In this document: positions 6,686-48,256 of the stretch, in pieces
How the letters are laid out: each line of letters starts with the position of its first letter
Position numbering within the stretch: position 1 is the first letter of the stretch
Notes under the pieces: model-generated
The model's input: the letters and a program-made list of their open reading frames with translations, nothing else
Database searches by the model: none
What the model was told of the DNA's origin: nothing
Position numbers and translations under genes: made by a program
Assembly (NCBI RefSeq): GCF_032444005.1
Contig: NC_091291.1
Span: 90,396,001-90,460,000 of the forward strand
DNA: 64,000 nt
Reading direction: 5' to 3'
Source of the DNA: Ranitomeya imitator
Lineage: Eukaryota

Positions 6686-6869
6686 GTGACGTATATAGAG
6701 GAAATGGCGGCTCGGCTGATACATGTATGTGCCATTGTATGTGTCACAGCCTACAGTACTGGAAGCACCAGTGCAAGGGGAAGCCAGGTACAATGCAGCC
6801 AATCAGGATACAGCTTTCAGTCTCCCCAAGTGCTGTAGAAAATAAGAGCTGTGGTGTGATTGGCTGTTT

Positions 6870-9800
6870 GTGACTGTGCTGCCCCAGGATGGCTGCCCTG
6901 CGGCACAGTATCCCGTACAGCGCTGTGTCACACTGTCCGTATACTGCGCCGTGTGCTGACACTTCTCCTGTTTGTGTCTGTCCCGGCTGTGAGCGGTCTC
7001 TGTGACTGTGCTGCCCCAGGATGGCTGCCCTGCGGCACAGTATCCGATACAGCGCTGTGTCACACCGTCCGTATACTGCGCCGTGTGCTGACACTTCTCC
7101 TGTTTGTGTCTGTCCCGGCTGTGAGCGGTCTCTGTGACTGTGCTGCCCCAGGATGGCTGCCCTGCGGCACAGTATCCCATACAGCGCTGTGTCACACCGT
7201 CCGTATACTGCGCCGTGTGCTGACACTTCTCCTGTTTGTGTCTGTCCCGGCTGTGAGCGGTCTCTGTGACTGTGCTGCCCTAGGATGGCTGCCCTGCGGC
7301 ACAGTATCCCATACAGGGCTGTGTCACACTGTCCGTATACTGCGCCGTGTGCTGACACTTCTCCTGTTTGTGTCTGTCCCGGCTGTGAGCGGTCTCTGTG
7401 ACTGTGCTGCCCTAGGATGGCTGCCCTGCGGCACAGTATCCCATACAGCGCTGTGTCACACTGTCCGTATACTGCGCCGTGTGCTGACACTTCTCCTGTT
7501 TGTGTCTGTCCTGGTTGTGAGCGGTCTCTGTGACTGTGCTGCCCCAGGATGGCTGCCCTGCGGCACAGTATCCGATACAGCGCTGTGTCACACTGTCCGT
7601 ATACTGCGCCGTGTGCTGACACTTCTCCTGTTTGTGTCTGTCCCGGCTGTGAGCGGTCTCTGTGACTGTGCTGCCCCAGGATGGCTGCCCTGCGGCACAG
7701 TATCCCGTACAGCGCTGTGTCACACCGTCCGTATACTGCGCCGTGTGCTGACACTTCTCCTGTTTGTGTCTGTCCCGGCTGTGAGCGGTCTCTGTGACTG
7801 TGCTGCCCCAGGATGGCTGCCCTGCGGCACAGTATCCCATACAGCGCTGTGTCACACTGTCCGTATACTGCGCCGTGTGCTGACACTTCTCCTGTTTGTG
7901 TCTGTCCCGGCTGTGAGCGGTCTCTGTGACTGTGCTGCCCCAGGATGGCTGCCCTGCGGCACAGTATCCGATACAGGGCTGTGTCACACTGTCCGTATAC
8001 TGCGCCGTGTGCTGACACTTCTCCTGTTTGTGTCTGTCCTGGTTGTGAGCGGTCTCTGTGACTGTGCTGCCCCAGGATGGCTGCCCTGTGGCACAGTATC
8101 CCATACAGGGCTGTGTCACACTGTCCGTATACTGCGCCGTGTGCTGACACTTCTCCTGTTTGTGTCTGTCCCGGCTGTGAGCGGTCTCTGTGACTGTGCT
8201 GCCCCAGGATGGCTGCCCTGCGGCACAGTATCCCATACAGCGCTGTGTCACACTGTCCGTATACTGCGCCGTGTGCTGACACTTCTCCTGTTTGTGTCTG
8301 TCCCAGCTGTGAGCGGTCTCTGTGACTGTGCTGCCCCAGTATGGCTGCCCTGCGGCACATTATCCCATACAGCGCTGTGTCACACCGTCCGTATACTGCG
8401 CCGTGTGCTGACACTTCTCCTGTTTGTGTCTGTCCCGGCTGTGAGCGGTCTCTGTGACTGTGCTGCCCCAGGATGGCTGCCCTGCGGCACAGTATCCGAT
8501 ACAGCGCTGTGTCACACCGTCCGTATACTGCGCCGTGTGCTGACACTTCTCCTGTTTGTGTCTGTCCCGGCTGTGAGCGGTCTCTGTGACTGTGCTGCCC
8601 CAGGATGGCTGCCCTGCGGCACAGTATCCCGTACAGCGCTGTGTCACACCGTCCGTATACTGCGCCGTGTGCTGACACTTCTCCTGTTTGTGTCTGTCCC
8701 GGCTGTGAGCGGTCTCTGTGACTGTGCTGCCCTAGGATGGCTGCCCTGCGGCACAGTATCCCATGCAGGGCTGTGTCACACTGTCCGTATACTGCGCCGT
8801 GTGCTGACACTTCTCCTGTTTGTGTCTGTCCCGGCTGTGAGCGGTCTCTGTGACTGTGCTGCCCTAGGATGGCTGCCCTGCGGCACAGTATCCCATACAG
8901 CGCTGTGTCACACTGTCCGTATACTGCGCCGTGTGCTGACACTTCTCCTGTTTGTGTCTGTCCCGGCTGTGAGCGGTCTCTGTGACTGTGCTGCCCTAGG
9001 ATGGCTGCCCTGCGGCACAGTATCCCATACAGCGCTGTGTCACACTGTCCGTATACTGCGCCGTGTGCTGACACTTCTCCTGTTTGTGTCTGTCCTGGTT
9101 GTGAGCGGTCTCTGTGACTGTGCTGCCCCAGGATGGCTGCCCTGCGGCACAGTATCCGATACAGCGCTGTGTCACACTGTCCGTATACTGCGCCGTGTGC
9201 TGACACTTCTCCTGTTTGTGTCTGTCCCGGCTGTGAGCGGTCTCTGTGACTGTGCTGCCCCAGGATGGCTGCCCTGCGGCACAGTATCCCGTACAGCGCT
9301 GTGTCACACCGTCCGTATACTGCGCCGTGTGCTGACACTTCTCCTGTTTGTGTCTGTCCCGGCTGTGAGCGGTCTCTGTGACTGTGCTGCCCCAGGATGG
9401 CTGCCCTGCGGCACAGTATCCCATACAGCGCTGTGTCACACTGTCCGTATACTGCGCCGTGTGCTGACACTTCTCCTGTTTGTGTCTGTCCCGGCTGTGA
9501 GCGGTCTCTGTGACTGTGCTGCCCCAGGATGGCTGCCCTGCGGCACAGTATCCGATACAGGGCTGTGTCACACTGTCCGTATACTGCGCCGTGTGCTGAC
9601 ACTTCTCCTGTTTGTGTCTGTCCTGGTTGTGAGCGGTCTCTGTGACTGTGCTGCCCCAGGATGGCTGCCCTGTGGCACAGTATCCCATACAGGGCTGTGT
9701 CACACTGTCCGTATACTGCGCCGTGTGCTGACACTTCTCCTGTTTGTGTCTGTCCCGGCTGTGAGCGGTCTCTGTGACTGTGCTGCCCCAGGATGGCTGC

Positions 9801-12800
9801 CCTGCGGCACAGTATCCCATACAGCGCTGTGTCACACTGTCCGTATACTGCGCCGTGTGCTGACACTTCTCCTGTTTGTGTCTGTCCCAGCTGTGAGCGG
9901 TCTCTGTGACTGTGCTGCCCCAGTATGGCTGCCCTGCGGCACATTATCCCATACAGCGCTGTGTCACACCGTCCGTATACTGCGCCGTGTGCTGACACTT
10001 CTCCTGTTTGTGTCTGTCCCGGCTGTGATTGGTTGTTTGTGACTGTGCTGCCCCAGGATGGCTGCCCTGCTGCACAGTATCCCATACAGCGCTGTGTCAC
10101 ACCGTCCGTATACTGCGCCGTGTGCTGACACTTCTCCTGTTTGTGTCTGTCCTGGCTGTGAGCGGTCTCTGTGACTGTGCTGCCCCAGTATGGCTGCCCT
10201 GCGGCACATTATCCCATACAGCGCTGTGTCACACCGTCCGTATACTGCGCCGTGTGCTGACACTTCTCCTGTTTGTGTCTGTCCCGGCTGTGAGTGGTCT
10301 CTGTGACTGTGCTGCCCCAGGATGGCTGCCCTGCGGCACAGTATCCCATACAGCGCTGTGTCACACTGTCCGTATACTGCGCCGTGTGCTGACACTCGCC
10401 TGTTTGTGTCTGTCCCGGCTGTGAGCGGTCTCTGTGACTGTGCTGCCCCAGGATGGCTGCCCTGCGGCACAGTATCCCATACAGCGCTGTGTCACACCGT
10501 CCGTATACTGCGCCGTGTGCTGACACTTCTCCTGTTTGTGTCTGTCCCGGCTGTGAGCGGTCTCTGTGACTGTGCTGCCCCAGGATGGCTGCCCTGCTGC
10601 ACAGTATCCCATACAGCGCTGTGTCACACTGTCTGTATACTGCGCCGTGTGCTGACACTTCTCCTGTTTGTGTCTGTCCCGGCTGTGAGCGGTCTCTGTG
10701 ACTGTGCTGCCCCAGGATGGCTGCCCTGCGGCACATTATCCCATACAGGGTTGTGTCACACTGTCCGTATACTGCGCCGTGTGCTGACACTTCTCCTGTT
10801 TGTGTCTGTCCTGGCTGTGAGCGGTCTCTGTGACTGTGCTGCCCCAGGATGGCTGCCCTGCGGCACATTATCCCGTACAGGGCTGTGTCACACTGTCCGT
10901 ATACTGCGCCGTGTGCTGACACTCAACTGTTTGTGTCTGTCCCGGCTGTGAGTGGTCTCTGTGACTGTGCTGCCCCAGGATGGCTGCCCTGCGGCACAGT
11001 ATCCCGTACAGCGCTGTGTCACACTGTCCGTATACTGCGCCGTGTGCTGACACTTCTCCTGTTTGTGTCTGTCCCGGCTGTGAGCGGTCTCTGTGACTGT
11101 GCTGCCCCAGGATGGCTGCCCTGCGGCACAGTATCCCGTACAGCGCTGTGTCACACTGTCCGTATACTGCGCCGTGTGCTGACACTTCTCCTGTTTGTGT
11201 CTGTCCCGGCTGTGAGTGGTCTCTGTGACTGTGCTGCCCCAGGATGGCTGCCCTGCGGCACAGTATCCCATACAGCGCTGTGTCACACTGTCCGTATACT
11301 GCGCCGTGTGCTGACACTCTCCTGTTTGTGTCTGTCCCAGCTGTGAGTGGTCTCTGTGACTGTGCTGCCCCAGGATGGCTGCCCTGCGGCACAGTATCCC
11401 ATACAGCGCTGTGTCACACTGTCCGTATACTGCACCGTGTGCTGACACTTCTCCTGTTTGTGTCTGTCCCGGCTGTGAGTGGTCTCTGTGACTGTGCTGC
11501 CCCAGGATGGCTGCCCTGCGACACAGTATCCCATACAGCGCTGTGTCACACTGTCCGTATACTGCGCCGTGTGCTGACACTTCTCCTGTTTGTGTCTGTC
11601 CTGGTTGTGAGCGGTCTCTGTGACTGTGCTACCCCAGGATGGCTGCCCTGCTGCACAGTATCCCGTACAGGGCTGTGTCACACTGTCCGTATACTGCGCC
11701 GTGTGCTGACACTCTCCTGTTTGTGTCTGTCCCGGCTGTGAGTGGTCTCTGTGACAGTGCTGCCCCAGGATGGCTGCCCTGCGGCACATTATCCCATACA
11801 GGGCTGTGTCACACCGTCCGTATACTGCGCCGTGTGCTGACACTCTCCTGTTTGTGTCTGTCCCGGCTGTGAGTGGTCTCTGTGACTGTGCTGCCCTGCG
11901 GCACAGTATCCCATACAGCGCTGTGTCACACTGTCCGTATACTGCGCCGTGTGCTGACACTTCTCCTGTTTGTGTCTGTCCCGGCTGTGAGCGGTCTCTG
12001 TGACTGTGCTGCCCCAGGATGGCTGCCCTGCGGCACAGTATCCCATACAGGGCTGTGTCACACTGTCCGTATACTGCGCCGTGTGCTGACACTCTCCTGT
12101 TTGTGTCTGTCCTGGTTGTGAGCGGTCTCTGTGACTGTGCTGCCCCAGGATGGCTGCCCTGCGACACAGTATCCCATACAGCGCTGTGTCACACTGTCCG
12201 TATACTGCGCCGTGTGCTGACACTTCTCCTGTTTGTGTCTGTCCCGGCTGTGAGCGGTCTCTGTGACTGTGCTGCCCCAGGATGGCTGCCCTGCGGCACA
12301 GTATCCCGTACAGCGCTGTGTCACACCGTCCGTATACTGCGCCGTGTGCTGACACTTCTCCTGTTTGTGTCTGTCCCGGCTGTGAGCGGTCTCTGTGACT
12401 GTGCTGCCCCAGGATGGCTGCCCTGCGGCACAGTATCCCGTACAGCGCTGTGTCACACCGTCCGTATACTGCGCCGTGTGCTGACACTTCTCCTGTTTGT
12501 GTCTGTCCCGGCTGTGAGCGGTCTCTGTGACTGTGCTGCCCCAGGATGGCTGCCCTGCGGCACAGTATCCCGTACAGCGCTGTGTCACACCGTCCGTATA
12601 CTGCGCCGTGTGCTGACACTTCTCCTGTTTGTGTCTGTCCTGGCTGTGAGCGGTCTCTGTGACTGTGCTGCCCCAGGATGGCTGCCCTGCGGCACAGTAT
12701 CCCGTACAGGGCTGTGTCACACTGTCCGTATACTGCGCCGTGTGCTGACACTTCTCCTGTTTGTGTCTGTCCCGGCTGTGAGCGGTCTCTGTGACTGTGC

Positions 12801-15800
12801 TGCCCCAGGATGGCTGCCCTGCGGCACAGTATCCCATACAGCGCTGTGTCACACTGTCCGTATACTGCGCCGTGTGCTGACACTTCTCCTGTTTGTGTCT
12901 GTCCTGGTTGTGAGCGGTCTCTGTGACTGTGCTACCCCAGGATGGCTGCCCTGCTGCACAGTATCCCGTACAGGGCTGTGTCACACTGTCCGTATACTGC
13001 GCCGTGTGCTGACACTCTCCTGTTTGTGTCTGTCCCGGCTGTGAGTGGTCTCTGTGACAGTGCTGCCCCAGGATGGCTGCCCTGCGGCACATTATCCCAT
13101 ACAGGGCTGTGTCACACCGTCCGTATACTGCGCCGTGTGCTGACACTCTCCTGTTTGTGTCTGTCCCGGCTGTGAGTGGTCTCTGTGACTGTGCTGCCCT
13201 GCGGCACAGTATCCCATACAGCGCTGTGTCACACTGTCCGTATACTGCGCCGTGTGCTGACACTTCTCCTGTTTGTGTCTGTCCCGGCTGTGAGCGGTCT
13301 CTGTGACTGTGCTGCCCCAGGATGGCTGCCCTGCGACACAGTATCCCATACAGCGCTGTGTCACACTGTCCGTATACTGCGCCGTGTGCTGACACTTCTC
13401 CTGTTTGTGTCTGTCCCGGCTGTGAGCGGTCTCTGTGACTGTGCTGCCCCAGGATGGCTGCCCTGCGGCACAGTATCCCATACAGCGCTGTGTCACAATG
13501 TCCGTATACTGCGCCGTGTGCTGACACTTCTCCTGTTTGTGTCTGTCCCGGCTGTGAGCGGTCTCTGTGACTGTGCTGCCCCAGGATGGCTGCCCTGCGG
13601 CACAGTATCCCGTACAGCGCTGTGTCACACCGTCCGTATACTGCGCCGTGTGCTGACACTCTCCTGTTTGTGTCTGTCCCGGCTGTGAGCGGTCTCTGTG
13701 ACTGTGCTGCCCCAGGATGGCTGCCCTGCGGCACAGTATCCCGTACAGCGCTGTGTCACACCATCCGTATACTGCGCCGTGTGCTGACACTTCTCCTGTT
13801 TGTGTCTGTCCTGGCTGTGAGCGGTGTCTGTGACTGTGCTGCCCCAGGATGGCTGCCCTGCGGCACAGTATCCCATACAGGGCTGTGTCACACTGTCCGT
13901 ATACTGCGCCGTGTGCTGACACTGTCCTGTTTGTGTCTGTCCCGGCTGTGAGCGGTCTCTGTGACTGTGCTGCCCCAGTATGGCTGCCCTGCGGCACATT
14001 ATCCCATACAGCGCTGTGTCACACCGTCCGTATACTGCGCCGTGTGCTGACACTTCTCCTGTTTGTGTCTGTCCCGGCTGTGAGTGGTCTCTGTGACTGT
14101 GCTGCCCCAGGATGGCTGCCCTGCGGCACAGTATCCCATACAGCCCTGTGTCACACCGTCCGTATACTGCGCCGTGTGCTGACACTTCTCCTGTTTGTGT
14201 CTGTCCCGGCTGTGAGTGGTCTCTGTGACTGTGCTGCCCCAGGATGGCTGCCCTGCGGCACATTATCCCATACAGGGCTGTGTCACACTGTCCGTATACT
14301 GCGCCGTGTGCTGACACTCGCCTGTTTGTGTCTGTCCCGGCTGTGAGCGGTCTCTGTGACTGTGCTGCCCCAGGATGGCTGCCCTGCGGCACAGTATCCC
14401 ATACAGCGCTGTGTCACACCGTCCGTATACTGCGCCGTGTGCTGACACTTCTCCTGTTTGTGTCTGTCCCGGCTGTGAGCGGTCTCTGTGACTGTGCTGC
14501 CCCAGGATGGCTGCCCTGCTGCACAGTATCCCATACAGCGCTGTGTCACACTGTCTGTATACTGCGCCGTGTGCTGACACTTCTCCTGTTTGTGTCTGTC
14601 CCGGCTGTGAGCGGTCTCTGTGACTGTGCTGCCCCAGGATGGCTGCCCTGCGGCACATTATCCCATACAGGGTTGTGTCACACTGTCCGTATACTGCGCC
14701 GTGTGCTGACACTTCTCCTGTTTGTGTCTGTCCTGGCTGTGAGCGGTCTCTGTGACTGTGCTGCCCCAGGATGGCTGCCCTGCGGCACATTATCCCGTAC
14801 AGGGCTGTGTCACACTGTCCGTATACTGCGCCGTGTGCTGACACTCAACTGTTTGTGTCTGTCCCGGCTGTGAGTGGTCTCTGTGACTGTGCTGCCCCAG
14901 GATGGCTGCCCTGCGGCACAGTATCCCGTACAGCGCTGTGTCACACTGTCCGTATACTGCGCCGTGTGCTGACACTTCTCCTGTTTGTGTCTGTCCCGGC
15001 TGTGAGTGGTCTCTGTGACTGTGCTGCCCCAGGATGGCTGCCCTGCGGCACAGTATCCCGTACAGCGCTGTGTCACACTGTCCGTATACTGCGCCGTGTG
15101 CTGACACTTCTCCTGTTTGTGTCTGTCCCGGCTGTGAGTGGTCTCTGTGACTGTGCTGCCCCAGGATGGCTGCCCTGCGGCACAGTATCCCATACAGCGC
15201 TGTGTCACACTGTCCGTATACTGCGCCGTGTGCTGACACTCTCCTGTTTGTGTCTGTCCCAGCTGTGAGTGGTCTCTGTGACTGTGCTGCCCCAGGATGG
15301 CTGCCCTGCGGCACAGTATCCCATACAGCGCTGTGTCACACTGTCCGTATACTGCACCGTGTGCTGACACTTCTCCTGTTTGTGTCTGTCCCGGCTGTGA
15401 GTGGTCTCTGTGACTGTGCTGCCCCAGGATGGCTGCCCTGCGACACAGTATCCCATACAGCGCTGTGTCACACTGTCCGTATACTGCGCCGTGTGCTGAC
15501 ACTTCTCCTGTTTGTGTCTGTCCTGGTTGTGAGCGGTCTCTGTGACTGTGCTACCCCAGGATGGCTGCCCTGCTGCACAGTATCCCGTACAGGGCTGTGT
15601 CACACTGTCCGTATACTGCGCCGTGTGCTGACACTCTCCTGTTTGTGTCTGTCCCGGCTGTGAGTGGTCTCTGTGACAGTGCTGCCCCAGGATGGCTGCC
15701 CTGCGGCACATTATCCCATACAGGGCTGTGTCACACCGTCCGTATACTGCGCCGTGTGCTGACACTCTCCTGTTTGTGTCTGTCCCGGCTGTGAGTGGTC

Positions 15801-18800
15801 TCTGTGACTGTGCTGCCCTGCGGCACAGTATCCCATACAGCGCTGTGTCACACTGTCCGTATACTGCGCCGTGTGCTGACACTTCTCGTGTTTGTGTCTG
15901 TCCCGGCTGTGAGCGGTCTCTGTGACTGTGCTGCCCCAGGATGGCTGCCCTGCGGCACAGTATCCCATACAGGGCTGTGTCACACTGTCCGTATACTGCG
16001 CCGTGTGCTGACACTCTCCTGTTTGTGTCTGTCCTGGTTGTGAGCGGTCTCTGTGACTGTGCTGCCCCAGGATGGCTGCCCTGCGACACAGTATCCCATA
16101 CAGCGCTGTGTCACACTGTCCGTATACTGCGCCGTGTGCTGACACTTCTCCTGTTTGTGTCTGTCCCGGCTGTGAGCGGTCTCTGTGACTGTGCTGCCCC
16201 AGGATGGCTGCCCTGCGGCACAGTATCCCGTACAGCGCTGTGTCACACCGTCCGTATACTGCGCCGTGTGCTGACACTTCTCCTGTTTGTGTCTGTCCCG
16301 GCTGTGAGCGGTCTCTGTGACTGTGCTGCCCCAGGATGGCTGCCCTGCGGCACAGTATCCGATACAGCGCTGTGTCACACCGTCCGTATACTGCGCCGTG
16401 TGCTGACACTTCTCCTGTTTGTGTCTGTCCCGGCTGTGAGCGGTCTCTGTGACTGTGCTGCCCCAGGATGGCTGCCCTGCGGCACAGTATCCCATACAGC
16501 GCTGTGTCACACCGTCCGTATACTGCGCCGTGTGCTGACACTTCTCCTGTTTGTGTCTGTCCCGGCTGTGAGCGGTCTCTGTGACTGTGCTGCCCTAGGA
16601 TGGCTGCCCTGCGGCACAGTATCCCATACAGGGCTGTGTCACACTGTCCGTATACTGCGCCGTGTGCTGACACTTCTCCTGTTTGTGTCTGTCCCGGCTG
16701 TGAGCGGTCTCTGTGACTGTGCTGCCCTAGGATGGCTGCCCTGCGGCACAGTATCCCATACAGCGCTGTGTCACACTGTCCGTATACTGCGCCGTGTGCT
16801 GACACTTCTCCTGTTTGTGTCTGTCCTGGTTGTGAGCGGTCTCTGTGACTGTGCTGCCCCAGGATGGCTGCCCTGCGGCACAGTATCCGATACAGCGCTG
16901 TGTCACACTGTCCGTATACTGCGCCGTGTGCTGACACTTCTCCTGTTTGTGTCTGTCCCGGCTGTGAGCGGTCTCTGTGACTGTGCTGCCCCAGGATGGC
17001 TGCCCTGCGGCACAGTATCCCGTACAGCGCTGTGTCACACCGTCCGTATACTGCGCCGTGTGCTGACACTTCTCCTGTTTGTGTCTGTCCCGGCTGTGAG
17101 CGGTCTCTGTGACTGTGCTGCCCCAGGATGGCTGCCCTGCGGCACAGTATCCCATACAGCGCTGTGTCACACTGTCCGTATACTGCGCCGTGTGCTGACA
17201 CTTCTCCTGTTTGTGTCTGTCCCGGCTGTGAGCGGTCTCTGTGACTGTGCTGCCCCAGGATGGCTGCCCTGCGGCACAGTATCCGATACAGGGCTGTGTC
17301 ACACTGTCCGTATACTGCGCCGTGTGCTGACACTTCTCCTGTTTGTGTCTGTCCTGGTTGTGAGCGGTCTCTGTGACTGTGCTGCCCCAGGATGGCTGCC
17401 CTGTGGCACAGTATCCCATACAGGGCTGTGTCACACTGTCCGTATACTGCGCCGTGTGCTGACACTTCTCCTGTTTGTGTCTGTCCCGGCTGTGAGCGGT
17501 CTCTGTGACTGTGCTGCCCCAGGATGGCTGCCCTGCGGCACAGTATCCCATACAGCGCTGTGTCACACTGTCCGTATACTGCGCCGTGTGCTGACACTTC
17601 TCCTGTTTGTGTCTGTCCCAGCTGTGAGCGGTCTCTGTGACTGTGCTGCCCCAGTATGGCTGCCCTGCGGCACATTATCCCATACAGCGCTGTGTCACAC
17701 CGTCCGTATACTGCGCCGTGTGCTGACACTTCTCCTGTTTGTGTCTGTCCCGGCTGTGAGCGGTCTCTGTGACTGTGCTGCCCCAGGATGGCTGCCCTGC
17801 GGCACAGTATCCGATACAGCGCTGTGTCACACCGTCCGTATACTGCGCCGTGTGCTGACACTTCTCCTGTTTGTGTCTGTCCCGGCTGTGAGCGGTCTCT
17901 GTGACTGTGCTGCCCCAGGATGGCTGCCCTGCGGCACAGTATCCCGTACAGCGCTGTGTCACACCGTCCGTATACTGCGCCGTGTGCTGACACTTCTCCT
18001 GTTTGTGTCTGTCCCGGCTGTGAGCGGTCTCTGTGACTGTGCTGCCCTAGGATGGCTGCCCTGCGGCACAGTATCCCATGCAGGGCTGTGTCACACTGTC
18101 CGTATACTGCGCCGTGTGCTGACACTTCTCCTGTTTGTGTCTGTCCCGGCTGTGAGCGGTCTCTGTGACTGTGCTGCCCTAGGATGGCTGCCCTGCGGCA
18201 CAGTATCCCATACAGCGCTGTGTCACACTGTCCGTATACTGCGCCGTGTGCTGACACTTCTCCTGTTTGTGTCTGTCCCGGCTGTGAGCGGTCTCTGTGA
18301 CTGTGCTGCCCTAGGATGGCTGCCCTGCGGCACAGTATCCCATACAGCGCTGTGTCACACTGTCCGTATACTGCGCCGTGTGCTGACACTTCTCCTGTTT
18401 GTGTCTGTCCTGGTTGTGAGCGGTCTCTGTGACTGTGCTGCCCCAGGATGGCTGCCCTGCGGCACAGTATCCGATACAGCGCTGTGTCACACTGTCCGTA
18501 TACTGCGCCGTGTGCTGACACTTCTCCTGTTTGTGTCTGTCCCGGCTGTGAGCGGTCTCTGTGACTGTGCTGCCCCAGGATGGCTGCCCTGCGGCACAGT
18601 ATCCCGTACAGCGCTGTGTCACACCGTCCGTATACTGCGCCGTGTGCTGACACTTCTCCTGTTTGTGTCTGTCCCGGCTGTGAGCGGTCTCTGTGACTGT
18701 GCTGCCCCAGGATGGCTGCCCTGCGGCACAGTATCCCATACAGCGCTGTGTCACACTGTCCGTATACTGCGCCGTGTGCTGACACTTCTCCTGTTTGTGT

Positions 18801-24800: not shown

Positions 24801-27800
24801 GCGCCGTGTGCTGACACTTCTCCTGTTTGTGTCTGTCCTGGTTGTGAGCGGTCTCTGTGACTGTGCTACCCCAGGATGGCTGCCCTGCTGCACAGTATCC
24901 CGTACAGGGCTGTGTCACACTGTCCGTATACTGCGCCGTGTGCTGACACTCTCCTGTTTGTGTCTGTCCCGGCTGTGAGTGGTCTCTGTGACAGTGCTGC
25001 CCCAGGATGGCTGCCCTGCGGCACATTATCCCATACAGGGCTGTGTCACACCGTCCGTATACTGCGCCGTGTGCTGACACTCTCCTGTTTGTGTCTGTCC
25101 CGGCTGTGAGTGGTCTCTGTGACTGTGCTGCCCTGCGGCACAGTATCCCATACAGCGCTGTGTCACACTGTCCGTATACTGCGCCGTGTGCTGACACTTC
25201 TCGTGTTTGTGTCTGTCCCGGCTGTGAGCGGTCTCTGTGACTGTGCTGCCCCAGGATGGCTGCCCTGCGGCACAGTATCCCATACAGGGCTGTGTCACAC
25301 TGTCCGTATACTGCGCCGTGTGCTGACACTCTCCTGTTTGTGTCTGTCCTGGTTGTGAGCGGTCTCTGTGACTGTGCTGCCCCAGGATGGCTGCCCTGCG
25401 ACACAGTATCCCATACAGCGCTGTGTCACACTGTCCGTATACTGCGCCGTGTGCTGACACTTCTCCTGTTTGTGTCTGTCCCGGCTGTGAGCGGTCTCTG
25501 TGACTGTGCTGCCCCAGGATGGCTGCCCTGCGGCACAGTATCCCGTACAGCGCTGTGTCACACCGTCCGTATACTGCGCCGTGTGCTGACACTTCTCCTG
25601 TTTGTGTCTGTCCCGGCTGTGAGCGGTCTCTGTGACTGTGCTGCCCCAGGATGGCTGCCCTGCGGCACAGTATCCCGTACAGCGCTGTGTCACACCGTCA
25701 GTATACTGCGCCGTGTGCTGACACTTCTCCTGTTTGTGTCTGTCCCGGCTGTGAGCGGTCTCTGTGACTGTGCTGCCCCAGGATGGCTGCCCTGCGGCAC
25801 AGTATCCCGTACAGCGCTGTGTCACACCGTCCGTATACTGCGCCGTGTGCTGACACTTCTCCTGTTTGTGTCTGTCCTGGCTGTGAGCGGTCTCTGTGAC
25901 TGTGCTGCCCCAGGATCGCTGCCCTGCGGCACAGTATCCCGTACAGGGCTGTGTCACACTGTCCGTATACTGCGCCGTGTGCTGACACTTCTCCTGTTTG
26001 TGTCTGTCCCGGCTGTGAGCGGTCTCTGTGACTGTCCTGCCCCAGGATGGCTGCCCTGCGGCACAGTATCCCATACAGCGCTGTGTCACACTGTCCGTAT
26101 ACTGCGCCGTGTGCTGACACTTCTCCTGTTTGTGTCTGTCCTGGTTGTGAGCGGTCTCTGTGACTGTGCTACCCCAGGATGGCTGCCCTGCTGCACAGTA
26201 TCCCGTACAGGGCTGTGTCACACTGTCCGTATACTGCGCCGTGTGCTGACACTCTCCTGTTTGTGTCTGTCCCGGCTGTGAGTGGTCTCTGTGACAGTGC
26301 TGCCCCAGGATGGCTGCCCTGCGGCACATTATCCCATACAGGGCTGTGTCACACCGTCCGTATACTGCGCCGTGTGCTGACACTCTCCTGTTTGTGTCTG
26401 TCCCGGCTGTGAGTGGTCTCTGTGACTGTGCTGCCCTGCGGCACAGTATCCCATACAGCGCTGTGTCACACTGTCCGTATACTGCGCCGTGTGCTGACAC
26501 TTCTCCTGTTTGTGTCTGTCCCGGCTGTGAGCGGTCTCTGTGACTGTGCTGCCCCAGGATGGCTGCCCTGCGACACAGTATCCCATACAGCGCTGTGTCA
26601 CACTGTCCGTATACTGCGCCGTGTGCTGACACTTCTCCTGTTTGTGTCTGTCCCGGCTGTGAGCGGTCTCTGTGACTGTGCTGCCCCAGGATGGCTGCCC
26701 TGCGGCACAGTATCCCATACAGCGCTGTGTCACAATGTCCGTATACTGCGCCGTGTGCTGACACTTCTCCTGTTTGTGTCTGTCCCGGCTGTGAGCGGTC
26801 TCTGTGACTGTGCTGCCCCAGGATGGCTGCCCTGCGGCACAGTATCCCGTACAGCGCTGTGTCACACCGTCCGTATACTGCGCCGTGTGCTGACACTCTC
26901 CTGTTTGTGTCTGTCCCGGCTGTGAGCGGTCTCTGTGACTGTGCTGCCCCAGGATGGCTGCCCTGCGGCACAGTATCCCGTACAGCGCTGTGTCACACCA
27001 TCCGTATACTGCGCCGTGTGCTGACACTTCTCCTGTTTGTGTCTGTCCTGGCTGTGAGCGGTGTCTGTGACTGTGCTGCCCCAGGATGGCTGCCCTGCGG
27101 CACAGTATCCCATACAGGGCTGTGTCACACTGTCCGTATACTGCGCCGTGTGCTGACACTGTCCTGTTTGTGTCTGTCCCGGCTGTGAGTGGTCTCTGTG
27201 ACTGTGCTGCCCCAGGATGGCTGCCCTGCTGCACAGTATCCCATACAGGGCTGTGTCACACTGTCCGTATACTGCGCCGTGTGCTGACACTTCTCCTGTT
27301 TGTGTCTGTCCTGGTTGTGAGCGGTCTCTGTGACTGTGCTGCCCCAGGATGGCTGCCCTGCGGCACAGTATCCCATACAGGGCTGTGTCACACTGTCCGT
27401 ATACTGCGCCGTGTGCTGACACTTCTCCTGTTTGTGTCTGTCGTGTCCCGGCTGTGAGCGGTCTCTGTGACTGTGCTGCCCCAGGATGGCTGCCCTGCGG
27501 CACAGTATCCCGTACAGCGCTGTGTCACACCGTCCGTATACTGCGCCGTGTGCTGACACTTCTCCTGTTTGTGTCTGTCCTGGCTGTGAGTGGTCTCTGT
27601 GACTGTGCTGCCCCAGGATGTCTGCCCTGCGGCACAGTATCCCATACAGCGCTGTGTCACACTGTCCGTATACTGCGCCGTGTGCTGACACTCTCCTGTT
27701 TGTGTCTGTCCCGGCTGTGAGCGGTCTCTGTGACTGTGCTGCCCCAGGATGGCTGCCCTGCGGCACAGTATCCCATACAGCGCTGTGTCACACCGTCCGT

Positions 27801-30800
27801 ATACTGCGCCGTGTGCTGACACTTCTCCTGTTTGTGTCTGTCCCGGCTGTGAGCGGTCTCTGTGACTGTGCTGCCCCAGGATGGCTGCCCTGCGGCACAG
27901 TATCCCGTACAGCGCTGTGTCACACCGTCCGTATACTGCGCCGTGTGCTGACACTTCTCCTGTTTGTGTCTGTCCTGGCTGTGAGCGGTCTCTGTGACTG
28001 TGCTGCCCCAGGATGGCTGCCCTGCGGCACAGTATCCCGTACAGGGCTGTGTCACACTGTCCGTATACTGCGCCTTGTGCTGACACTTCTCCTGTTTGTG
28101 TCTGTCCCGGCTGTGAGTGGTCTCTGTGACTGTGCTGCCCCAGGATGTCTGCCCTGCGGCACAGTATCCCATACAGCGCTGTGTCACACTGTCCGTATAC
28201 TGCGCCGTGTGCTGACACTTCTCCTGTTTGTGTCTGTCCCGGCTGTGAGCGGTCTCTGTGACTGTGCTGCCCCAGGATGGCTGCCCTGCGGCACAGTATC
28301 CCATACAGCGCTGTGTCACACCGTCCGTATACTGCTCCGTGTGCTGACACTTCTCCTGTTTGTGTCTGTCCCGGCTGTGAGCGGTCTCTGTGACTGTGCT
28401 GCCCCAGGATGGCTGCCCTGCGGCACAGTATCCCATACAGCGCTGTGTCACACCGTCCGTATACTGCGCCGTGTGCTGACACTTCTCCTGTTTGTGTCTG
28501 TCCCGGCTGTGAGCGGTCTCTGTGACTGTGCTGCCCCAGGATGGCTGCCCTGCTGCACAGTATCCCATACAGGGCTGTGTCACACTGTCCGTATACTGCG
28601 CCGTGTGCTGACACTTCTCCTGTTTGTGTCTGTCCCGGCTGTGAGTGGTCTCTGTGACTGTGCTGCCCCAGGATGGCTGCCCTGCGGCACAGTATCCCAT
28701 ACAGCGCTGTGTCACACTGTCCGTATACTGCGCCGTGTGCTGACACTCTCCTGTTTGTGTCTGTCCTGGCTGTGAGCGGTCTCTGTGACTGTGCTGCCCC
28801 AGGATGGCTGCCCTGCGGCACAGTATCCCGTACAGCGCTTTGTCACACCGTCCGTATACTGCGCCGTGTGCTGACATTCGCCTGTTTGTGTCTGTCCCGG
28901 CTGTGAGCGGTGTCTGTGACTGTGCTGCCCCAGGATGGCTGCCCTGCGGCACAGTATCCCATACAGCGCTGTGTCACACCGTCCGTATACTGCGCCGTGT
29001 GCTGACACTTCTCCTGTTTGTGTCTGTCGTGTCCTGGCTGTGAGCGGTCTCTGTGACTGTGCTGCCCCAGGATGGCTGCCCTGCGGCACAGTATCCAATA
29101 CAGCGCTGTGTCACACTGTCCGTATACTGCGCCGTGTGCTGACACTTCTCCTGTTTGTGTCTGTCCTGGTTGTGAGCGGTCTCTGTGACAGTGCTGCCCC
29201 AGGATGGCTGCCCTGCGGCACAGTATCCCATACAGGGCTGTGTCACACTGTCCGTATACTGCGCCGTGTGCTGACACTTCTCCTGTTTGTGTCTGTCCCG
29301 GCTGTGAGCGGTCTCTGTGACTGTGCTGCCCCAGGATGGCTGCCCTGCGGCACATTATCCCATACAGGGCTGTGTCACACCGTCCGTATACTGCGCCGTG
29401 TGTTGACACTCTCCTGTTTGTCTGTCCCGGCTGTGAGCGGTCTCTGTGACTGTGCTGCCCCAGGATGGCTGCCCTGCGGCACAGTATCCCATACAGCGCT
29501 GTGTCACACTGTCCGTATACTGCGCCGTGTGCTGACACTTCTCCTGTTTGTGTCTGTCCCGGCTGTGAGCGGTCTCTGTGACTGTGCTGCCCCAGGATGG
29601 CTGCCCTGCGGCACAGTATCCCATACAGCCCTGTGTCACACTGTCCGTATACTGCGCCGTGTGCTGACACTTCTCCTGTTTGTGTCTGTCCCGGCTGTGA
29701 GTGGTCTCTGTGACTGTGCTGCCCCAGGATGGCTGCCCTGCGGCACAGTATCCCGTACAGGGCTGTGTCACACTGTCCGTATACTGCGCCGTGTGCTGAC
29801 ACTCTCCTGTTTGTGTCTGTCCTGGTTGTGAGCTGTCTCTGTGACTGTGTTGCCCCAGGATGGCTGCCCTGCGGCACAGTATCCCGTACAGCGCTGTGTC
29901 ACACTGTCCGTATACTGCGCCGTGTGCTGACTCTTCTCCTGTTTGTGTCTGTCCCGGCTGTGAGTGGTCTCTGTGACTGTGCTGCCCCAGGATGGCTGCC
30001 CTGCGGCACATTATCCCATACAGCGCTGTGTCACCCTGTCCGTATACTGCGCCGTGTGCTGACACTTCTCCTGTTTGTGTCTGTCCTGGTTGTGAGCGGT
30101 CTCTGTGACTGTGCTGCCCCAGGATGGCTGCCCTGCGGCACAGTATCCCATACAGGGCTGTGTCACACTGTCCGTATACTGCGCCGTGTGCTGACACTTC
30201 TCCTGTTTGTGTCTGTCCTGGCTGTGAGCGGTCTCTGTGACTGTGCTGCCCCAGGATGGCTGCCCTGCGGCACAGTATCCCATACAGTGCTGTGTCACAC
30301 TGTCCGTATACTGCGCCGTGTGCTGACACTTCTCCTGTTTGTGTCTGTCGTGTCCCGGCTGTGAGCGGTCTCTGTGACTGTGCTGCCCCAGGATGGCTGC
30401 CCTGCGGCACAGTATCCCGTACAGCGCTGTGTCACACCGTCCGTATACTGCGCCGTGTGCTGACACTTCTCCTGTTTGTGTCTGTCCCGGCTGTGAGCGG
30501 TCTCTGTGACTGTGCTGCCCCAGGATGGCTGCCCTGCGGCACAGTATCCCGTACAGGGCTGTGTCACACTGTCCGTATACTGCGCCGTGTGCTGACACTT
30601 CTCCTGTTTGTGTCTGTCCCGGCTGTGAGTGGTCTCTGTGACTGTGCTGCCCCAGGATGGCTGCCCTGCGGCACAGTATCCCATACAGCGCTGTGTCACA
30701 CCGTCCGTATACTGCGCCGTGTGCTGACACTTCTCCTGTTTGTGTCTGTCCCGGCTGTGAGTGGTCTCTGTGACTGTGCTGCCCCAGGATGGCTGCCCTG

Positions 30801-33800
30801 CGGCACAGTATCCCATACAGCGCTGTGTCACACCGTCCGTATACTGCGCCGTGTGCTGACACTTCTCCTGTTTGTGTCTGTCCCGGCTGTGAGCGGTCTC
30901 TGTGACTGTGCTGCCCCAGGATGGCTGCCCTGCGGCACAGTATTCCATACAGCGCTGTGTCACACTGTCCGTATACTGCGCCGTGCGCTGACACTCTCCT
31001 GTTTGTGTCTGTCCTGGCTGTGAGCGGTGTCTGTGACTGTGCTGCCCCAGGATGGCTGCCCTGCGGCACAGTATCCCATACAGGGCTGTGTCACACTGTC
31101 CGTATACTGCGCCGTGTGCTGACACTTCTCCTGTTTGTGTCTGTCCCGGCTGTGAGCGGTCTCTGTGACTGTGCTGCCCCAGGATGGCTGCCCTGCTGCA
31201 CAGTATCCCATACAGCGCTGTGTCACACCGTCCGTATACTGCGCCGTGTGCTGACACTTCTCCTGTTTGTGTCTGTCCCGGCTGTGAGCGGTCTCTGTGA
31301 CTGTGCTGCCCTAGGATGGCTGCCCTGCGGCACAGTATCCCATACAGGGCTGTGTCACACTGTCCGTATACTGCGCCGTGTGCTGACACTTCTCCTGTTT
31401 GTGTCTGTCCCGGCTGTGAGCGGTCTCTGTGACTGTGCTGCCCTAGGATGGCTGCCCTGCGGCACAGTATCCCATACAGGGCTGTGTCACACTGTCCGTA
31501 TACTGCGCCGTGTGCTGACACTTCTCCTGTTTGTGTCTGTCCCGGCTGTGAGCGGTCTCTGTGACTGTGCTGCCCCAGGATGGCTGCCCTGCGGCACAGT
31601 ATCCCGTACAGCGCTGTGTCACACCGTCCGTATACTGCGCCGTGTGCTGACACTTCTCCTGTTTGTGTCTGTCCTGGCTGTGAGCGGTCTCTGTGACTGT
31701 GCTGCCCCAGGATGGCTGCCCTGCGGCACAGTATCCCGTACAGGGCTGTGTCACACTGTCCGTATACTGCGCCTTGTGCTGACACTTCTCCTGTTTGTGT
31801 CTGTCCCGGCTGTGAGTGGTCTCTGTGACTGTGCTGCCCCAGGATGTCTGCCCTGCGGCACAGTATCCCATACAGCGCTGTGTCACACTGTCCGTATACT
31901 GCGCCGTGTGCTGACACTTCTCCTGTTTGTGTCTGTCCCGGCTGTGAGCGGTCTCTGTGACTGTGCTGCCCCAGGATGGCTGCCCTGCGGCACAGTATCC
32001 CATACAGCGCTGTGTCACACCGTCCGTATACTGCTCCGTGTGCTGACACTTCTCCTGTTTGTGTCTGTCCCGGCTGTGAGCGGTCTCTGTGACTGTGCTG
32101 CCCCAGGATGGCTGCCCTGCGGCACAGTATCCCATACAGCGCTGTGTCACACCGTCCGTATACTGCGCCGTGTGCTGACACTTCTCCTGTTTGTGTCTGT
32201 CCCGGCTGTGAGCGGTCTCTGTGACTGTGCTGCCCCAGGATGGCTGCCCTGCTGCACAGTATCCCATACAGGGCTGTGTCACACTGTCCGTATACTGCGC
32301 CGTGTGCTGACACTTCTCCTGTTTGTGTCTGTCCCGGCTGTGAGTGGTCTCTGTGACTGTGCTGCCCCAGGATGGCTGCCCTGCGGCACAGTATCCCATA
32401 CAGCGCTGTGTCACACTGTCCGTATACTGCGCCGTGTGCTGACACTCTCCTGTTTGTGTCTGTCCTGGCTGTGAGCGGTCTCTGTGACTGTGCTGCCCCA
32501 GGATGGCTGCCCTGCGGCACAGTATCCCGTACAGCGCTTTGTCACACCGTCCGTATACTGCGCCGTGTGCTGACATTCGCCTGTTTGTGTCTGTCCCGGC
32601 TGTGAGCGGTGTCTGTGACTGTGCTGCCCCAGGATGGCTGCCCTGCGGCACAGTATCCCATACAGCGCTGTGTCACACCGTCCGTATACTGCGCCGTGTG
32701 CTGACACTTCTCCTGTTTGTGTCTGTCGTGTCCTGGCTGTGAGCGGTCTCTGTGACTGTGCTGCCCCAGGATGGCTGCCCTGCGGCACAGTATCCAATAC
32801 AGCGCTGTGTCACACTGTCCGTATACTGCGCCGTGTGCTGACACTTCTCCTGTTTGTGTCTGTCCTGGTTGTGAGCGGTCTCTGTGACAGTGCTGCCCCA
32901 GGATGGCTGCCCTGCGGCACAGTATCCCATACAGGGCTGTGTCACACTGTCCGTATACTGCGCCGTGTGCTGACACTTCTCCTGTTTGTGTCTGTCCCGG
33001 CTGTGAGCGGTCTCTGTGACTGTGCTGCCCCAGGATGGCTGCCCTGCGGCACATTATCCCATACAGGGCTGTGTCACACCGTCCGTATACTGCGCCGTGT
33101 GTTGACACTCTCCTGTTTGTCTGTCCCGGCTGTGAGCGGTCTCTGTGACTGTGCTGCCCCAGGATGGCTGCCCTGCGGCACAGTATCCCATACAGCGCTG
33201 TGTCACACTGTCCGTATACTGCGCCGTGTGCTGACACTTCTCCTGTTTGTGTCTGTCCCGGCTGTGAGCGGTCTCTGTGACTGTGCTGCCCCAGGATGGC
33301 TGCCCTGCGGCACAGTATCCCATACAGCCCTGTGTCACACTGTCCGTATACTGCGCCGTGTGCTGACACTTCTCCTGTTTGTGTCTGTCCCGGCTGTGAG
33401 TGGTCTCTGTGACTGTGCTGCCCCAGGATGGCTGCCCTGCGGCACAGTATCCCGTACAGGGCTGTGTCACACTGTCCGTATACTGCGCCGTGTGCTGACA
33501 CTCTCCTGTTTGTGTCTGTCCTGGTTGTGAGCTGTCTCTGTGACTGTGTTGCCCCAGGATGGCTGCCCTGCGGCACAGTATCCCGTACAGCGCTGTGTCA
33601 CACTGTCCGTATACTGCGCCGTGTGCTGACTCTTCTCCTGTTTGTGTCTGTCCCGGCTGTGAGTGGTCTCTGTGACTGTGCTGCCCCAGGATGGCTGCCC
33701 TGCGGCACATTATCCCATACAGCGCTGTGTCACCCTGTCCGTATACTGCGCCGTGTGCTGACACTTCTCCTGTTTGTGTCTGTCCTGGTTGTGAGCGGTC

Positions 33801-35620
33801 TCTGTGACTGTGCTGCCCCAGGATGGCTGCCCTGCGGCACAGTATCCCATACAGGGCTGTGTCACACTGTCCGTATACTGCGCCGTGTGCTGACACTTCT
33901 CCTGTTTGTGTCTGTCCTGGCTGTGAGCGGTCTCTGTGACTGTGCTGCCCCAGGATGGCTGCCCTGCGGCACAGTATCCCATACAGTGCTGTGTCACACT
34001 GTCCGTATACTGCGCCGTGTGCTGACACTTCTCCTGTTTGTGTCTGTCGTGTCCCGGCTGTGAGCGGTCTCTGTGACTGTGCTGCCCCAGGATGGCTGCC
34101 CTGCGGCACAGTATCCCGTACAGCGCTGTGTCACACCGTCCGTATACTGCGCCGTGTGCTGACACTTCTCCTGTTTGTGTCTGTCCTGGCTGTGAGCGGT
34201 CTCTGTGACTGTGCTGCCCCAGGATGGCTGCCCTGCGGCACAGTATCCCGTACAGCGCTGTGTCACACCGTCCGTATACTGCGCCGTGTGCTGACACTTC
34301 TCCTGTTTGTGTCTGTCCTGGCTGTGAGCGATCTCTGTGACTGTGCTGCCTCAGGATGGCTGCCCTGCTGCACAGTATCCCATACAGGGCTGTGTCACAC
34401 TGTCCGTATACTGCGCCGTGTGCTGACACTCTCCTGTTTGTGTCTGTCCCGGCTGTGAGCGGTCTCTGTGACTGTGCTGCCCCAGGATGGCTGCCCTGCG
34501 GCACAGTATCCCATACAGGGCTGTGTCACACTGTCCGTATACTGCGCCGTGTGCTGACACTTCTCCTGTTTGTGTCTGTCCCGGCTGTGAGTGGTCTCTG
34601 TGACTGTGCTGCCCCAGGATGGCTGCCCTGCGGCACAGTATCCCGTACAGCGCTGTGTCACACCGTCCGTATACTGCGCCGTGTGCTGACACTTCTCCTG
34701 TTTGTGTCTGTCCCGGCTGTGAGCGGTCTCTGTGACTGTGCTGCCCCAGGATGGCTGCCCTGCGGCACAGTATCCCGTACAGGGCTGTGTCACACTGTCC
34801 GTATACTGCGCCGTGTGCTGACACTTCTCCTGTTTGTGTCTGTCCCGGCTGTGAGTGGTCTCTGTGACTGTGCTGCCCCAGGATGGCTGCCCTGCGGCAC
34901 AGTATCCCATACAGCGCTGTGTCACACCGTCCGTATACTGCGCCGTGTGCTGACACTTCTCCTGTTTGTGTCTGTCCCGGCTGTGAGCGGTCTCTGTGAC
35001 TGTGCTGCCCCAGGATGGCTGCCCTGCGGCACAGTATTCCATACAGCGCTGTGTCACACTGTCCGTATACTGCGCCGTGCGCTGACACTCTCCTGTTTGT
35101 GTCTGTCCTGGCTGTGAGCGGTGTCTGTGACTGTGCTGCCCCAGGATGGCTGCCCTGCGGCACAGTATCCCATACAGGGCTGTGTCACACTGTCCGTATA
35201 CTGCGCCGTGTGCTGACACTTCTCCTGTTTGTGTCTGTCCCGGCTGTGAGCGGTCTCTGTGACTGTGCTGCCCCAGGATGGCTGCCCTGCTGCACAGTAT
35301 CCCATACAGCGCTGTGTCACACCGTCCGTATACTGCGCCGTGTGCTGACACTTCTCCTGTTTGTGTCTGTCCCGGCTGTGAGCGGTCTCTGTGACTGTGC
35401 TGCCCTAGGATGGCTGCCCTGCGGCACAGTATCCCATACAGGGCTGTGTCACACTGTCCGTATACTGCGCCGTGTGCTGACACTTCTCCTGTTTGTGTCT
35501 GTCCCGGCTGTGAGCGGTCTCTGTGACTGTGCTGCCCCAGGATGGCTGCCCTGCTGCACAGTATCCCATACAGCGCTGTGTCACCCTGTCCGTATACTGC
35601 GCCGTGTGCTGACACTCTCC
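6870..35620. repeat. 132-bp tandem satellite filling CENATAC intron 1 (6686-35643), about 218 units
   Basis: Consensus gtgactgtgctgccccaggatggctgccctgcggcacagtatcccatacagcgctgtgtcacactgtccgtatactgcgccgtgtgctgacacttctcctgtttgtgtctgtcccggctgtgagcggtctct; 44-aa periodicity in the ORF track. Confidence 0.98.
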
Positions 35621-35643
35621 TTCTCTTTGCGGCTTTCTTATAG

Positions 35644-48209: not shown

Positions 48210-48256
<47 letters not shown>

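What the first reader, a model, noticed from the sequence alone, without database searches (positions are those of the whole stretch)
6870..35643. A 29-kb satellite built from the intron's own branch point and pyrimidine tract, in a spliceosome gene
The last unit runs straight into the exon 2 acceptor: gtgCTGACactctcc-ttctctttgcggctttcttatag. The best yUnAy branch-point candidate (A35612, 32 nt before the exon) lies inside the repeat. Each of about 218 units therefore carries CTGAC plus a 25-nt AG-free C/T-rich tract, that is, a decoy 3' splice region lacking only a good AG. The host encodes a U11/U12-associated splicing factor, and intron 1 is about 62% of the coding span. A decoy or regulatory role is inference.
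Basis: partly seen in the sequence, partly recalled or inferred. Interest (0 to 1): 0.72.

Follow-up and report, generated by a model that had tools for sequence, protein, structure and literature searches.

The report
Intron satellite grown from branch-point region
In the mimic poison frog, a 132-base piece at the end of the first intron of the splicing-factor gene CENATAC, including its likely branch point, has been copied about 219 times, swelling a short intron to 29 kb; it is real, but looks like a young, tolerated repeat and not a regulatory device.

Summary
A 132-bp tandem array (about 219 units, 6869-35621) fills 99% of CENATAC intron 1 in Ranitomeya imitator. It stops 22 nt before the exon-2 acceptor.

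- **Signals in the units:** 217 units carry CTGAC followed by an AG-free tract of about 31 nt that is 75% pyrimidine.
- **Origin:** The claim that the array is built from the intron's own signals is supported. In three other hyloid frog families intron 1 is 0.8-2.4 kb and has no array. Their yTnAC motif aligns with the frog's CTGAC (A35612), and sequence inside the last unit matches Leptodactylus at the same position.
- **Absent in relatives:** A related species' DNA contig shows one unit at single-copy depth. The Dendrobates tinctorius coding span (19.0 kb) equals the R. imitator span minus the array.
- **No sign of function:** The decoy or regulatory reading has no support so far. The annotated protein joins exon 1 to exon 2, RNA contigs start at the exon-2 edge, and none lies on the array. 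Variation is concentrated at CpG sites, and CTGAC is no more constant than 93 of the 132 positions.
- **Correction:** CENATAC belongs to the U4atac/U6atac snRNPs, not U11/U12.
- **Seen before:** This scan has already noted arrays of this kind at other splice junctions of the same genome (ofd1, MRTO4, BTBD9, ATP4A).

Ordinary in kind, but a neat natural test of 3' splice-site choice.

The parts
6566..6685 (+). CENATAC exon 1 (coding part, aa 1-40); donor GT at 6686
   Evidence: Pfam PF14968 profile 2-35; exact match to XP_069598012.1 aa 1-40
6686..6868 (+). Unique 5' part of intron 1 (183 nt). Its first ~35 nt are conserved in other hyloid frogs.
6869..35621 (+). 132-bp tandem array, about 219 units, 99.3% of intron 1
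6935..25675 (+). Exact internal duplication: 6935-16360 is identical to 16250-25675 (9426 nt, offset 9315). Either a very recent unequal exchange or assembly inflation.
27795..34186 (+). Second exact internal duplication: 27795-30487 is identical to 31494-34186 (2693 nt, offset 3699)
35490..35621 (+). Last unit. This is the stretch that a related species' DNA contig covers once at single-copy depth. It contains ancestral intron sequence (35580-35599 matches Leptodactylus).
35609..35613 (+). CTGAC, the likely branch point (A35612). It is positionally aligned with TTCAC (Leptodactylus, Dendropsophus) and CTAAC (Rhinoderma).
35622..35643 (+). Unique 22-nt tail: the stronger half of the pyrimidine tract and the acceptor TAG|G
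35644..35810 (+). CENATAC exon 2
   Evidence: Pfam profile 37-88. RNA contigs start at its 5' edge and join 35810 to 38140. Exact match to the annotated protein.
38140..53566 (+). CENATAC exons 3-11. Approximate positions: 38140-38238, 39665-39732, 43576-43638, 46521-46583, 49398-49514, 50500-50532, 51400-51489, 52591-52722, 53501-53566 with the stop codon.

Best explanation
This is a young, locus-specific satellite. It arose when a 132-bp stretch of CENATAC intron 1, lying just upstream of the acceptor, was copied head-to-tail. The likely route is replication slippage followed by unequal exchange, which is inferred.

The copied stretch contained the ancestral branch-point motif and the first 8-9 bases of the pyrimidine tract. 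It did not contain the stronger 3' half of the tract or the acceptor AG. An intron of a few hundred bases thus grew to 29 kb, within the Ranitomeya lineage.

The array is tolerated because internal units lack a good YAG behind the tract: the first AG is a GAG, and the tract is broken by G's. The last unit keeps the original tail and TAG|G, so exon 1 is still joined to exon 2. The units then drift, mainly by CpG decay, and are reshuffled in blocks. Any effect on splicing speed or factor binding is a by-product and is unproven.
For: **Shown:**
- Array anatomy and edges.
- The host gene, and exact agreement of the annotated R. imitator protein with exon 1 joined to exon 2.
- RNA-type runs X7 and X9 hold contigs that start at 35642-35644, carry 128-152 further bases unlike the intron, and join exon 2 to 3 and 3 to 4 at GT..AG. 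They have zero depth on the array, although intron 2 is covered.
- Intron 1 is 484 nt in Spea, 844 in Dendropsophus, 1950 in Leptodactylus and about 2363 in Rhinoderma, none with the array.
- In the four-species alignment A2, the T, A and C of the yTnAC motif are invariant columns at A35612.
- 35580-35599, inside the repeat, matches the syntenic Leptodactylus block 15/20. Only 2-13 of 1000 shuffles score as well.
- The organism B DNA contig covers 35489-35988 at depth 12.5, with nothing on 35250-35449 and 38 more bases unlike the array.
- Coding spans: R. imitator 47,001 nt, R. variabilis 27,987, D. tinctorius 18,984. R. imitator minus the array is 18,248.
- Same-species DNA (X1) depth on the array is only 117-147, against more than 200,000 on neighbouring transposons. 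It is therefore not a genome-wide satellite.
- 33% of unit variants fall on the 10.6% of positions that are CpG, and CpG observed/expected is 0.58.
- 93 of 132 positions are as invariant as CTGAC.

**Context:** other splice-junction arrays are noted in the same genome.
Against: - No experiment bears on function, so a functional effect cannot be excluded.
- Branch-point-plus-tract half-sites are about 8 times denser in the array than in introns 2-10 (7.0 against 0.9 per kb). Some load on SF1/U2AF is therefore conceivable.
- The single-copy state in a relative rests on one short-read contig of a coded species, and its letters could not be read.
- DNA of the closest assemblies (R. variabilis, D. 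tinctorius, P. terribilis, Anomaloglossus) could not be fetched.
- R. variabilis' span is about 9.7 kb longer than expected without any array, so a shorter array there is not excluded by span alone.
- The whole unit against the relatives' whole introns gives no significant local alignment. Homology is shown only for the 3' third of the unit.
- The source of the 31-nt junction part of the unit is not identified.
Confidence: 0.75

Rival explanations
1. Functional decoy, sponge or timer. The roughly 200 branch-point-plus-tract half-sites bind SF1, U2AF2 or U2 snRNP on the nascent transcript. They slow or tune removal of intron 1, or add transcription delay, and so set CENATAC output. The array would be kept by selection.
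For: Half-sites are 8 times denser than in ordinary introns of the gene, and 60 times denser for CTRAY-type motifs. There is a precedent that tandem branch-point repeats bind SF1 and slow splicing in vitro (Gomafu, PMC3116199). CENATAC is known to be autoregulated through splicing, though via competing U2/U12-type donors (PMC8280824).
Against: - Normal exon 1-2 joining, and no array RNA in two RNA-type runs.
- The motif is UGCUGAC, 5 of 7 matches to the high-affinity UACUAAC.
- The tract is interrupted by G's.
- CTGAC is no better kept than most positions, and variants pile up at CpG.
- The array appears absent or far smaller in close relatives, which have the same gene.
- Similar arrays sit at splice junctions of unrelated genes in this genome.
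- An excised intron is short-lived, unlike a stable nuclear RNA.
Confidence: 0.08
2. The array is real, but its size is inflated or mis-assembled. The true array would be much shorter, for example about 19 kb or less, because the assembler duplicated blocks.
For: There are exact duplications of 9426 nt and 2693 nt with no mismatch. Summed contig depth on the array in same-species DNA is only about 10-15 times single-copy depth.
Against: Recent unequal exchange in a satellite gives exactly such blocks. The reads tool states that contig depth is not a copy number, and short unitigs from a variant-rich repeat are easily lost. The NCBI gene span on record equals the window's span, but that is the same assembly.
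Confidence: 0.12
3. Imported satellite. A pre-existing satellite or transposon-borne repeat landed in a short intron next to the acceptor, and its CTGAC was then taken over as the branch point.
For: The array does not hold a whole number of units. The 31-nt junction part of the unit has no identified source in either flank.
Against: - The 3' third of the unit is co-linear with the ancestral intron end of other hyloids, branch-point motif included.
- A relative carries one unit at single-copy depth in the same place.
- Depth in genomic DNA is low.
- No Rfam or Pfam signal of a mobile element.
- No look-alike in the scan's notes, which is weak evidence.
Confidence: 0.05

Closest known systems
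[quoted passage not shown]
   Same: Head-to-tail copies of the gene's own splice-signal-bearing sequence. Regular splicing goes on. Units show block turnover typical of minisatellites.
   Different: Mirages include exon sequence and the splice junction itself. Here the unit stops 22 nt short of the acceptor and holds no exon sequence. Size is 219 units and 29 kb, against a few units.
Other splice-junction arrays noted by this scan in the same frog genome (MRTO4 intron 3 acceptor side, ofd1 donor, BTBD9, ATP4A)
   Same: Same genome. Local amplification of sequence at or beside a splice site. Judged tolerated by-products by earlier follow-ups (AI notes, not re-tested here).
   Different: This one is among the largest. 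It copies the branch point and half a tract but no AG, and it sits in a minor-spliceosome gene.
Satellite-filled gigantic introns of Drosophila Y-linked genes kl-3 and kl-5 (PMC6508621)
   Same: An intron that consists almost wholly of satellite DNA and must be transcribed through and spliced across.
   Different: Those are megabase-sized simple satellites with a dedicated germline expression programme. This one is 29 kb with a complex 132-bp unit derived from the intron itself, and no special programme is known.
Tandem UACUAAC repeats of the lncRNA Gomafu/MIAT that bind SF1 (PMC3116199)
   Same: A tandem array of branch-point-type motifs on one RNA.
   Different: Gomafu has the perfect high-affinity heptamer in a stable nuclear RNA and is conserved across amniotes. 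Here the motif is weaker (UGCUGAC), intronic, and lineage-specific.
Human intronic tandem repeats associated with splicing variation (spl-TRs; PMC10078293)
   Same: Intronic tandem repeats near splice sites as a common class of variant.
   Different: Those are mostly short polymorphic repeats with statistical links to splicing. No such data exist for this array.

Membership tests
Mirage minisatellite | Tandem head-to-tail repeat inside a gene, made of the gene's own sequence | tested here: met
Mirage minisatellite | Unit spans an exon-intron boundary (contains exon sequence and the splice junction) | tested here: not met
   The repeat ends at 35621/22, which is 22 nt before the AG. The tail plus the start of exon 2 against the unit is no better than shuffles. 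A lone 10-mer shared with mid-exon 2 is out of register.
Satellite-containing gigantic intron (Drosophila kl-3/kl-5 type) | Intron made almost wholly of satellite DNA | tested here: met
   28,753 of 28,958 nt
Satellite-containing gigantic intron (Drosophila kl-3/kl-5 type) | Megabase scale, simple-sequence satellite, dedicated expression programme | tested here: not met
   29 kb with a 132-bp complex unit. The expression programme is not testable here.
Branch-point repeat SF1 sponge (Gomafu type) | Tandem copies of the high-affinity heptamer UACUAAC | tested here: not met
   The unit has TGCTGAC, 5 of 7
Branch-point repeat SF1 sponge (Gomafu type) | SF1 binding and a stable nuclear RNA carrying the repeats | not testable with these tools
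   The only hint is that no RNA contig lies on the array in X7 or X9
Recursive splice sites | Juxtaposed acceptor-donor AG|GT(R)AG within the intron | tested here: not met
   AGGT occurs 0 times in the array
CENATAC/CCDC84 (host gene) | Pfam PF14968 above the curated cut-off, and orthology to annotated CENATAC | tested here: met
   Exon 1 scores 31.6 bits, exon 2 56.3, exon 10 84.6, against a cut-off of 25.3. All exons are identical to R. imitator XP_069598012.1. RPS25 lies next door.

The most novel reading that the evidence does not exclude
The array is more than a passenger. About 200 co-oriented SF1/U2AF half-sites in the first intron of a spliceosome gene would act in cis, as a kinetic delay or a local store of early 3'-splice-site factors, and tune CENATAC output.

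A broader version is that R. imitator has a transcription- or splicing-coupled mutational process that preferentially amplifies splice-signal-bearing segments. That would explain why so many of its arrays start or end at splice junctions.
Probability: 0.07. Interest if true: 0.7.

Novelty: new member of a known kind. Interest (0 to 1): 0.35.

Why it matters
It is a clean natural experiment in 3' splice-site choice. More than 200 copies of the real branch-point motif and half its tract lie upstream of the one site that is used. The used site differs from the others mainly by the last 22 bases.

It also documents, with an outgroup comparison, how a short intron can grow about 60- to 90-fold in one lineage by amplifying its own end. 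This is one small, concrete contribution to the very large genomes of poison frogs. If several such arrays in this genome really nucleate at splice junctions more often than chance, that pattern would be the more interesting result, more so than this single locus.

Tried and rejected
**Searches that gave nothing**
- The word-index protein search with the exon-2 reading frame, meant to catch exon-2-only gene calls on relatives' DNA contigs, found no candidate.
- Look-ups of the Xenopus isoform P0001 and the Engystomops isoform P0092 found no record.
Only coding spans could be used.

**Comparisons that were not significant**
- The whole unit against the whole intron 1 of Leptodactylus or Dendropsophus. 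Only the syntenic, anchored comparison is significant.
- The 22-nt tail and the 5' flank against the 31-nt junction part of the unit. The exact first duplication breakpoints therefore stay open.

**Ideas tested and dropped**
- Unit derived from a known RNA gene or ribozyme: no Rfam match at gathering or at E <= 1.
- Array reading frames as coding (132 is a multiple of 3): only chance-level Pfam hits.
- CTCF-type motif in the unit, checked by eye: the spacing does not fit.
- The U12-type donor look-alike GTATCCCAT, present in 116 units: it lacks the TT at +7/+8, so it is treated as coincidence.
- RNA fold of two units: z = -2.9, modest.

Exons were searched one by one by reference, and the annotated protein was compared with each frame separately.
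Full report
**1. What is there**

Tandem Repeats Finder reports one array at 6869-35621, with period 132, 218.8 copies and 95% matches.
- CTGAC occurs 217 times in it at 131-133 nt spacing. Seven units are 117 nt, five are 137 nt, and two double-length gaps mark units that lost the motif.
- Units are on average 97.6% identical to their consensus, and 69 distinct unit sequences occur.
- Written as unit types, the array shows nested block duplications.
  - The largest is exact: 6935-16360 equals 16250-25675 (9426 nt, no mismatch).
  - A second exact pair is 27795-30487 and 31494-34186.
- Such blocks are what recent unequal exchange leaves in a satellite. They could also be assembly inflation, and I could not size the array with reads.
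- The window has no N.

**2. The host gene and the species**

The array sits in an intron of CENATAC, in the mimic poison frog.
- Exon 1 (6566-6685) matches Pfam CCDC84 (PF14968) at profile positions 2-35, and exon 2 (35644-35810) at 37-88. They are therefore adjacent coding pieces.
- Further exons match down to profile position 320, and an RPS25 exon lies at 63031-63183.
- A profile-free search with exon 2 alone returned frog CENATAC proteins. A search with the Spea protein listed the Ranitomeya imitator protein.
- All 11 exons of that protein (XP_069598012.1) are found letter for letter in the window, frame by frame.
- Its recorded span, 47,001 nt, equals 6566-53566. The window is therefore R. 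imitator.
- Intron 1 is 6686-35643, or 28,958 nt.
- It consists of 183 unique bases, the array, and 22 unique bases.
Exons were searched one by one by reference.
- CENATAC is a protein of the U4atac/U6atac and U4atac/U6atac.U5 snRNPs, not of U11/U12 (PMC8280824).

**3.

These hold, with small additions.
- The repeat ends inside ...GCTGACACTCTCC at 35621/22. The tail carries a 13-base pyrimidine run, a second run, and TAG|G.
- CTGAC with A35612 is the only yUnAy at a workable distance from the acceptor.
- In 201 of 217 units the first AG after that A lies 32-33 nt downstream and is a GAG. The 25 bases after the motif are 75% pyrimidine, against 84% at the true site.
- By a simple count, 'yUnAy plus AG-free pyrimidine tract' occurs 7.0 times per kb in the array and 0.9 per kb in introns 2-10.
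- Complete look-alike acceptors (YAG behind a tract and a branch motif) are rarer in the array, 0.28 against 0.96 per kb.
- The eight that exist come from a CpG change that makes CCCAG.
- AGGT never occurs in the array, so recursive splicing is not predicted.

**4. Where the unit came from**

Intron 1 of the orthologue has no such array in any relative I could read.

| Species | Intron 1 length |
|---|---|
| Spea | 484 nt |
| Dendropsophus | 844 nt |
| Leptodactylus | 1950 nt |
| Rhinoderma | about 2363 nt |

- The last 50-65 bases of the intron are recognisably conserved among the hyloid frogs.
- In the four-way alignment A2, the motif yTnAC is CTGAC in Ranitomeya, TTCAC in Leptodactylus and Dendropsophus, and CTAAC in Rhinoderma. 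It occupies the same columns, with its T, A and C invariant.
- In Leptodactylus the A is 31 nt from the end of the intron, the same as in Ranitomeya.
- Upstream of it, 35580-35599, wholly inside the repeat, matches the syntenic Leptodactylus block at 15 of 20 positions. Only 2-13 of 1000 shuffles reach that score in the syntenic window.
- A search of the whole unit against the whole foreign intron is not significant. Homology is therefore shown for the 3' third of the unit only.
- Neither the 5' flank nor the tail explains the 31-nt junction part of the unit.

**5. Relatives and reads** (the one reads call allowed)

- DNA contigs of the same species (X1) confirm the junction. A 436-nt contig covers 35588-36023 with one difference and stops where the repeat begins.
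- Summed depth on the array in X1 is only 117-147, while transposon pieces in intron 2 reach 200,000-340,000. The unit is therefore not a genome-wide satellite.
- A DNA run of a second, coded species (X14) has a 657-nt contig at single-copy depth (12.5).
  - It covers 35489-35988. That is exactly one unit length, plus the tail, exon 2 and the start of intron 2.
  - It then runs on for 38 bases unlike the array.
  - Nothing from that run lies on the next units (35250-35449).
  - That is what a single, unamplified copy looks like.
- Coding spans agree with this:

| Species | Coding span |
|---|---|
| D. tinctorius | 18,984 nt |
| R. imitator minus the array | 18,248 nt |
| R. variabilis | 27,987 nt |
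| P. terribilis | 67,837 nt |
| Anomaloglossus | 51,945 nt |

**6. Does it do anything?**

I found no sign that it does.
- The annotated protein joins exon 1 to exon 2.
- Two RNA-type runs (X7, X9) have contigs that begin at the exon-2 edge and carry 128-152 further bases that do not fit the intron. This is consistent with exon 1 plus leader, but I could not read the letters. The same contigs join exons 2-3 and 3-4 at GT..AG.
- The same runs cover intron 2 at exon-like depth but have zero depth on the array. This argues against retention of intron 1 and against stable array RNA. Contigs do miss rare forms.
- Within the array, 93 of 132 positions vary in two units or fewer, so the constancy of CTGAC is not special.
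- One third of all variants fall on the 14 CpG positions, and CpG observed/expected is 0.58. That is the pattern of methylated, unconstrained DNA.
- The unit matches no Rfam family, and its open frames match no Pfam family.
- The window itself is repeat-prone. Four arrays make up about 57% of it.
- The scan's earlier notes list arrays at splice junctions of ofd1, MRTO4, BTBD9 and ATP4A in the same genome. These are AI notes that I did not re-test.
- Against that background, the host being a splicing gene is best read as coincidence.

**7. Comparison with what is known**

- The nearest published kind is the amphioxus 'mirage' minisatellite. Its defining feature, a unit spanning the exon-intron boundary, is tested and not met here (PMC3087553).
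- It shares with the Drosophila Y-linked giant genes only the fact of a satellite-filled intron (PMC6508621).
- The one tested precedent for a branch-point sponge is Gomafu's UACUAAC repeats. It differs in motif strength, RNA stability and conservation (PMC3116199).
- Intronic tandem repeats linked to splicing are common in humans (PMC10078293).

**8. Verdict**

- The origin from the intron's own branch-point region is supported.
- The decoy or regulatory role is unsupported and unlikely, about 0.08.
- The array is a large, young member of a known kind of intronic repeat.
- It is useful as a natural test of 3' splice-site choice and as a documented case of intron growth.

Noticed in passing
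window 1239-6247: An 18-bp tandem array (279 copies, 89% matches, strongly G-rich on the + strand) lies about 320 bp upstream of the CENATAC start codon, against the promoter region.
   Followed up: no
window 58972-60590, 61250-62104, 63771-63992: Three more minisatellites (29 bp x 56, 31 bp x 27.6, 35 bp x 6.5) lie between the end of CENATAC and RPS25 and inside RPS25. Together with the two larger arrays, about 57% of the window is tandem repeat.
   Followed up: no
window 35811-38139 (intron 2): The RNA-type runs X7 and X9 hold contigs over much of intron 2 at about the same depth as the exons, beside spliced exon 2-3 contigs. This could be a retained or detained intron, or DNA in the libraries. 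The same contigs differ from the window by about 5% and lack 930-nt (35989-36918) and 320-nt (37771-38090) stretches that have very high genomic depth, so those are probably transposon insertions.
   Followed up: partly
window 48384-48391 (+): ATATCCTT, the core of a U12-type donor, lies on the sense strand in intron 6. Published work describes competing U2- and U12-type donors as an autoregulatory device in animal CENATAC (PMC8280824). The count of such octamers in the window is at chance level, and the context is a T-run.
   Followed up: partly
window 50500-51300: An earlier first-stage note calls 50790-51060 a complete type-I hammerhead ribozyme. Rfam found no family there at gathering score or at E <= 1.
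   Followed up: partly
array, 116 units (e.g. 35561-35569): GTATCCCAT in the unit resembles a U12-type donor (GTATCC...) but lacks the TT at +7/+8. I treated it as coincidence.
   Followed up: partly
array, 52 units (e.g. 10287) and 8 units (e.g. 8300): CpG changes make GTGAGT (a better donor look-alike) in 52 units and CCCAG (a complete acceptor look-alike) in 8 units. Together with CAG|G in each unit, these outline a possible 103-nt frame-shifting pseudo-exon. No RNA contig shows its use.
   Followed up: partly
window 35771-35780 (exon 2) against the unit start: A 10-mer (GACTGTGCTG) is shared between mid-exon 2 and the start of the unit. In the shuffle test, 15 of 1000 reach the score. It is out of register with the array and probably chance.
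   Followed up: partly
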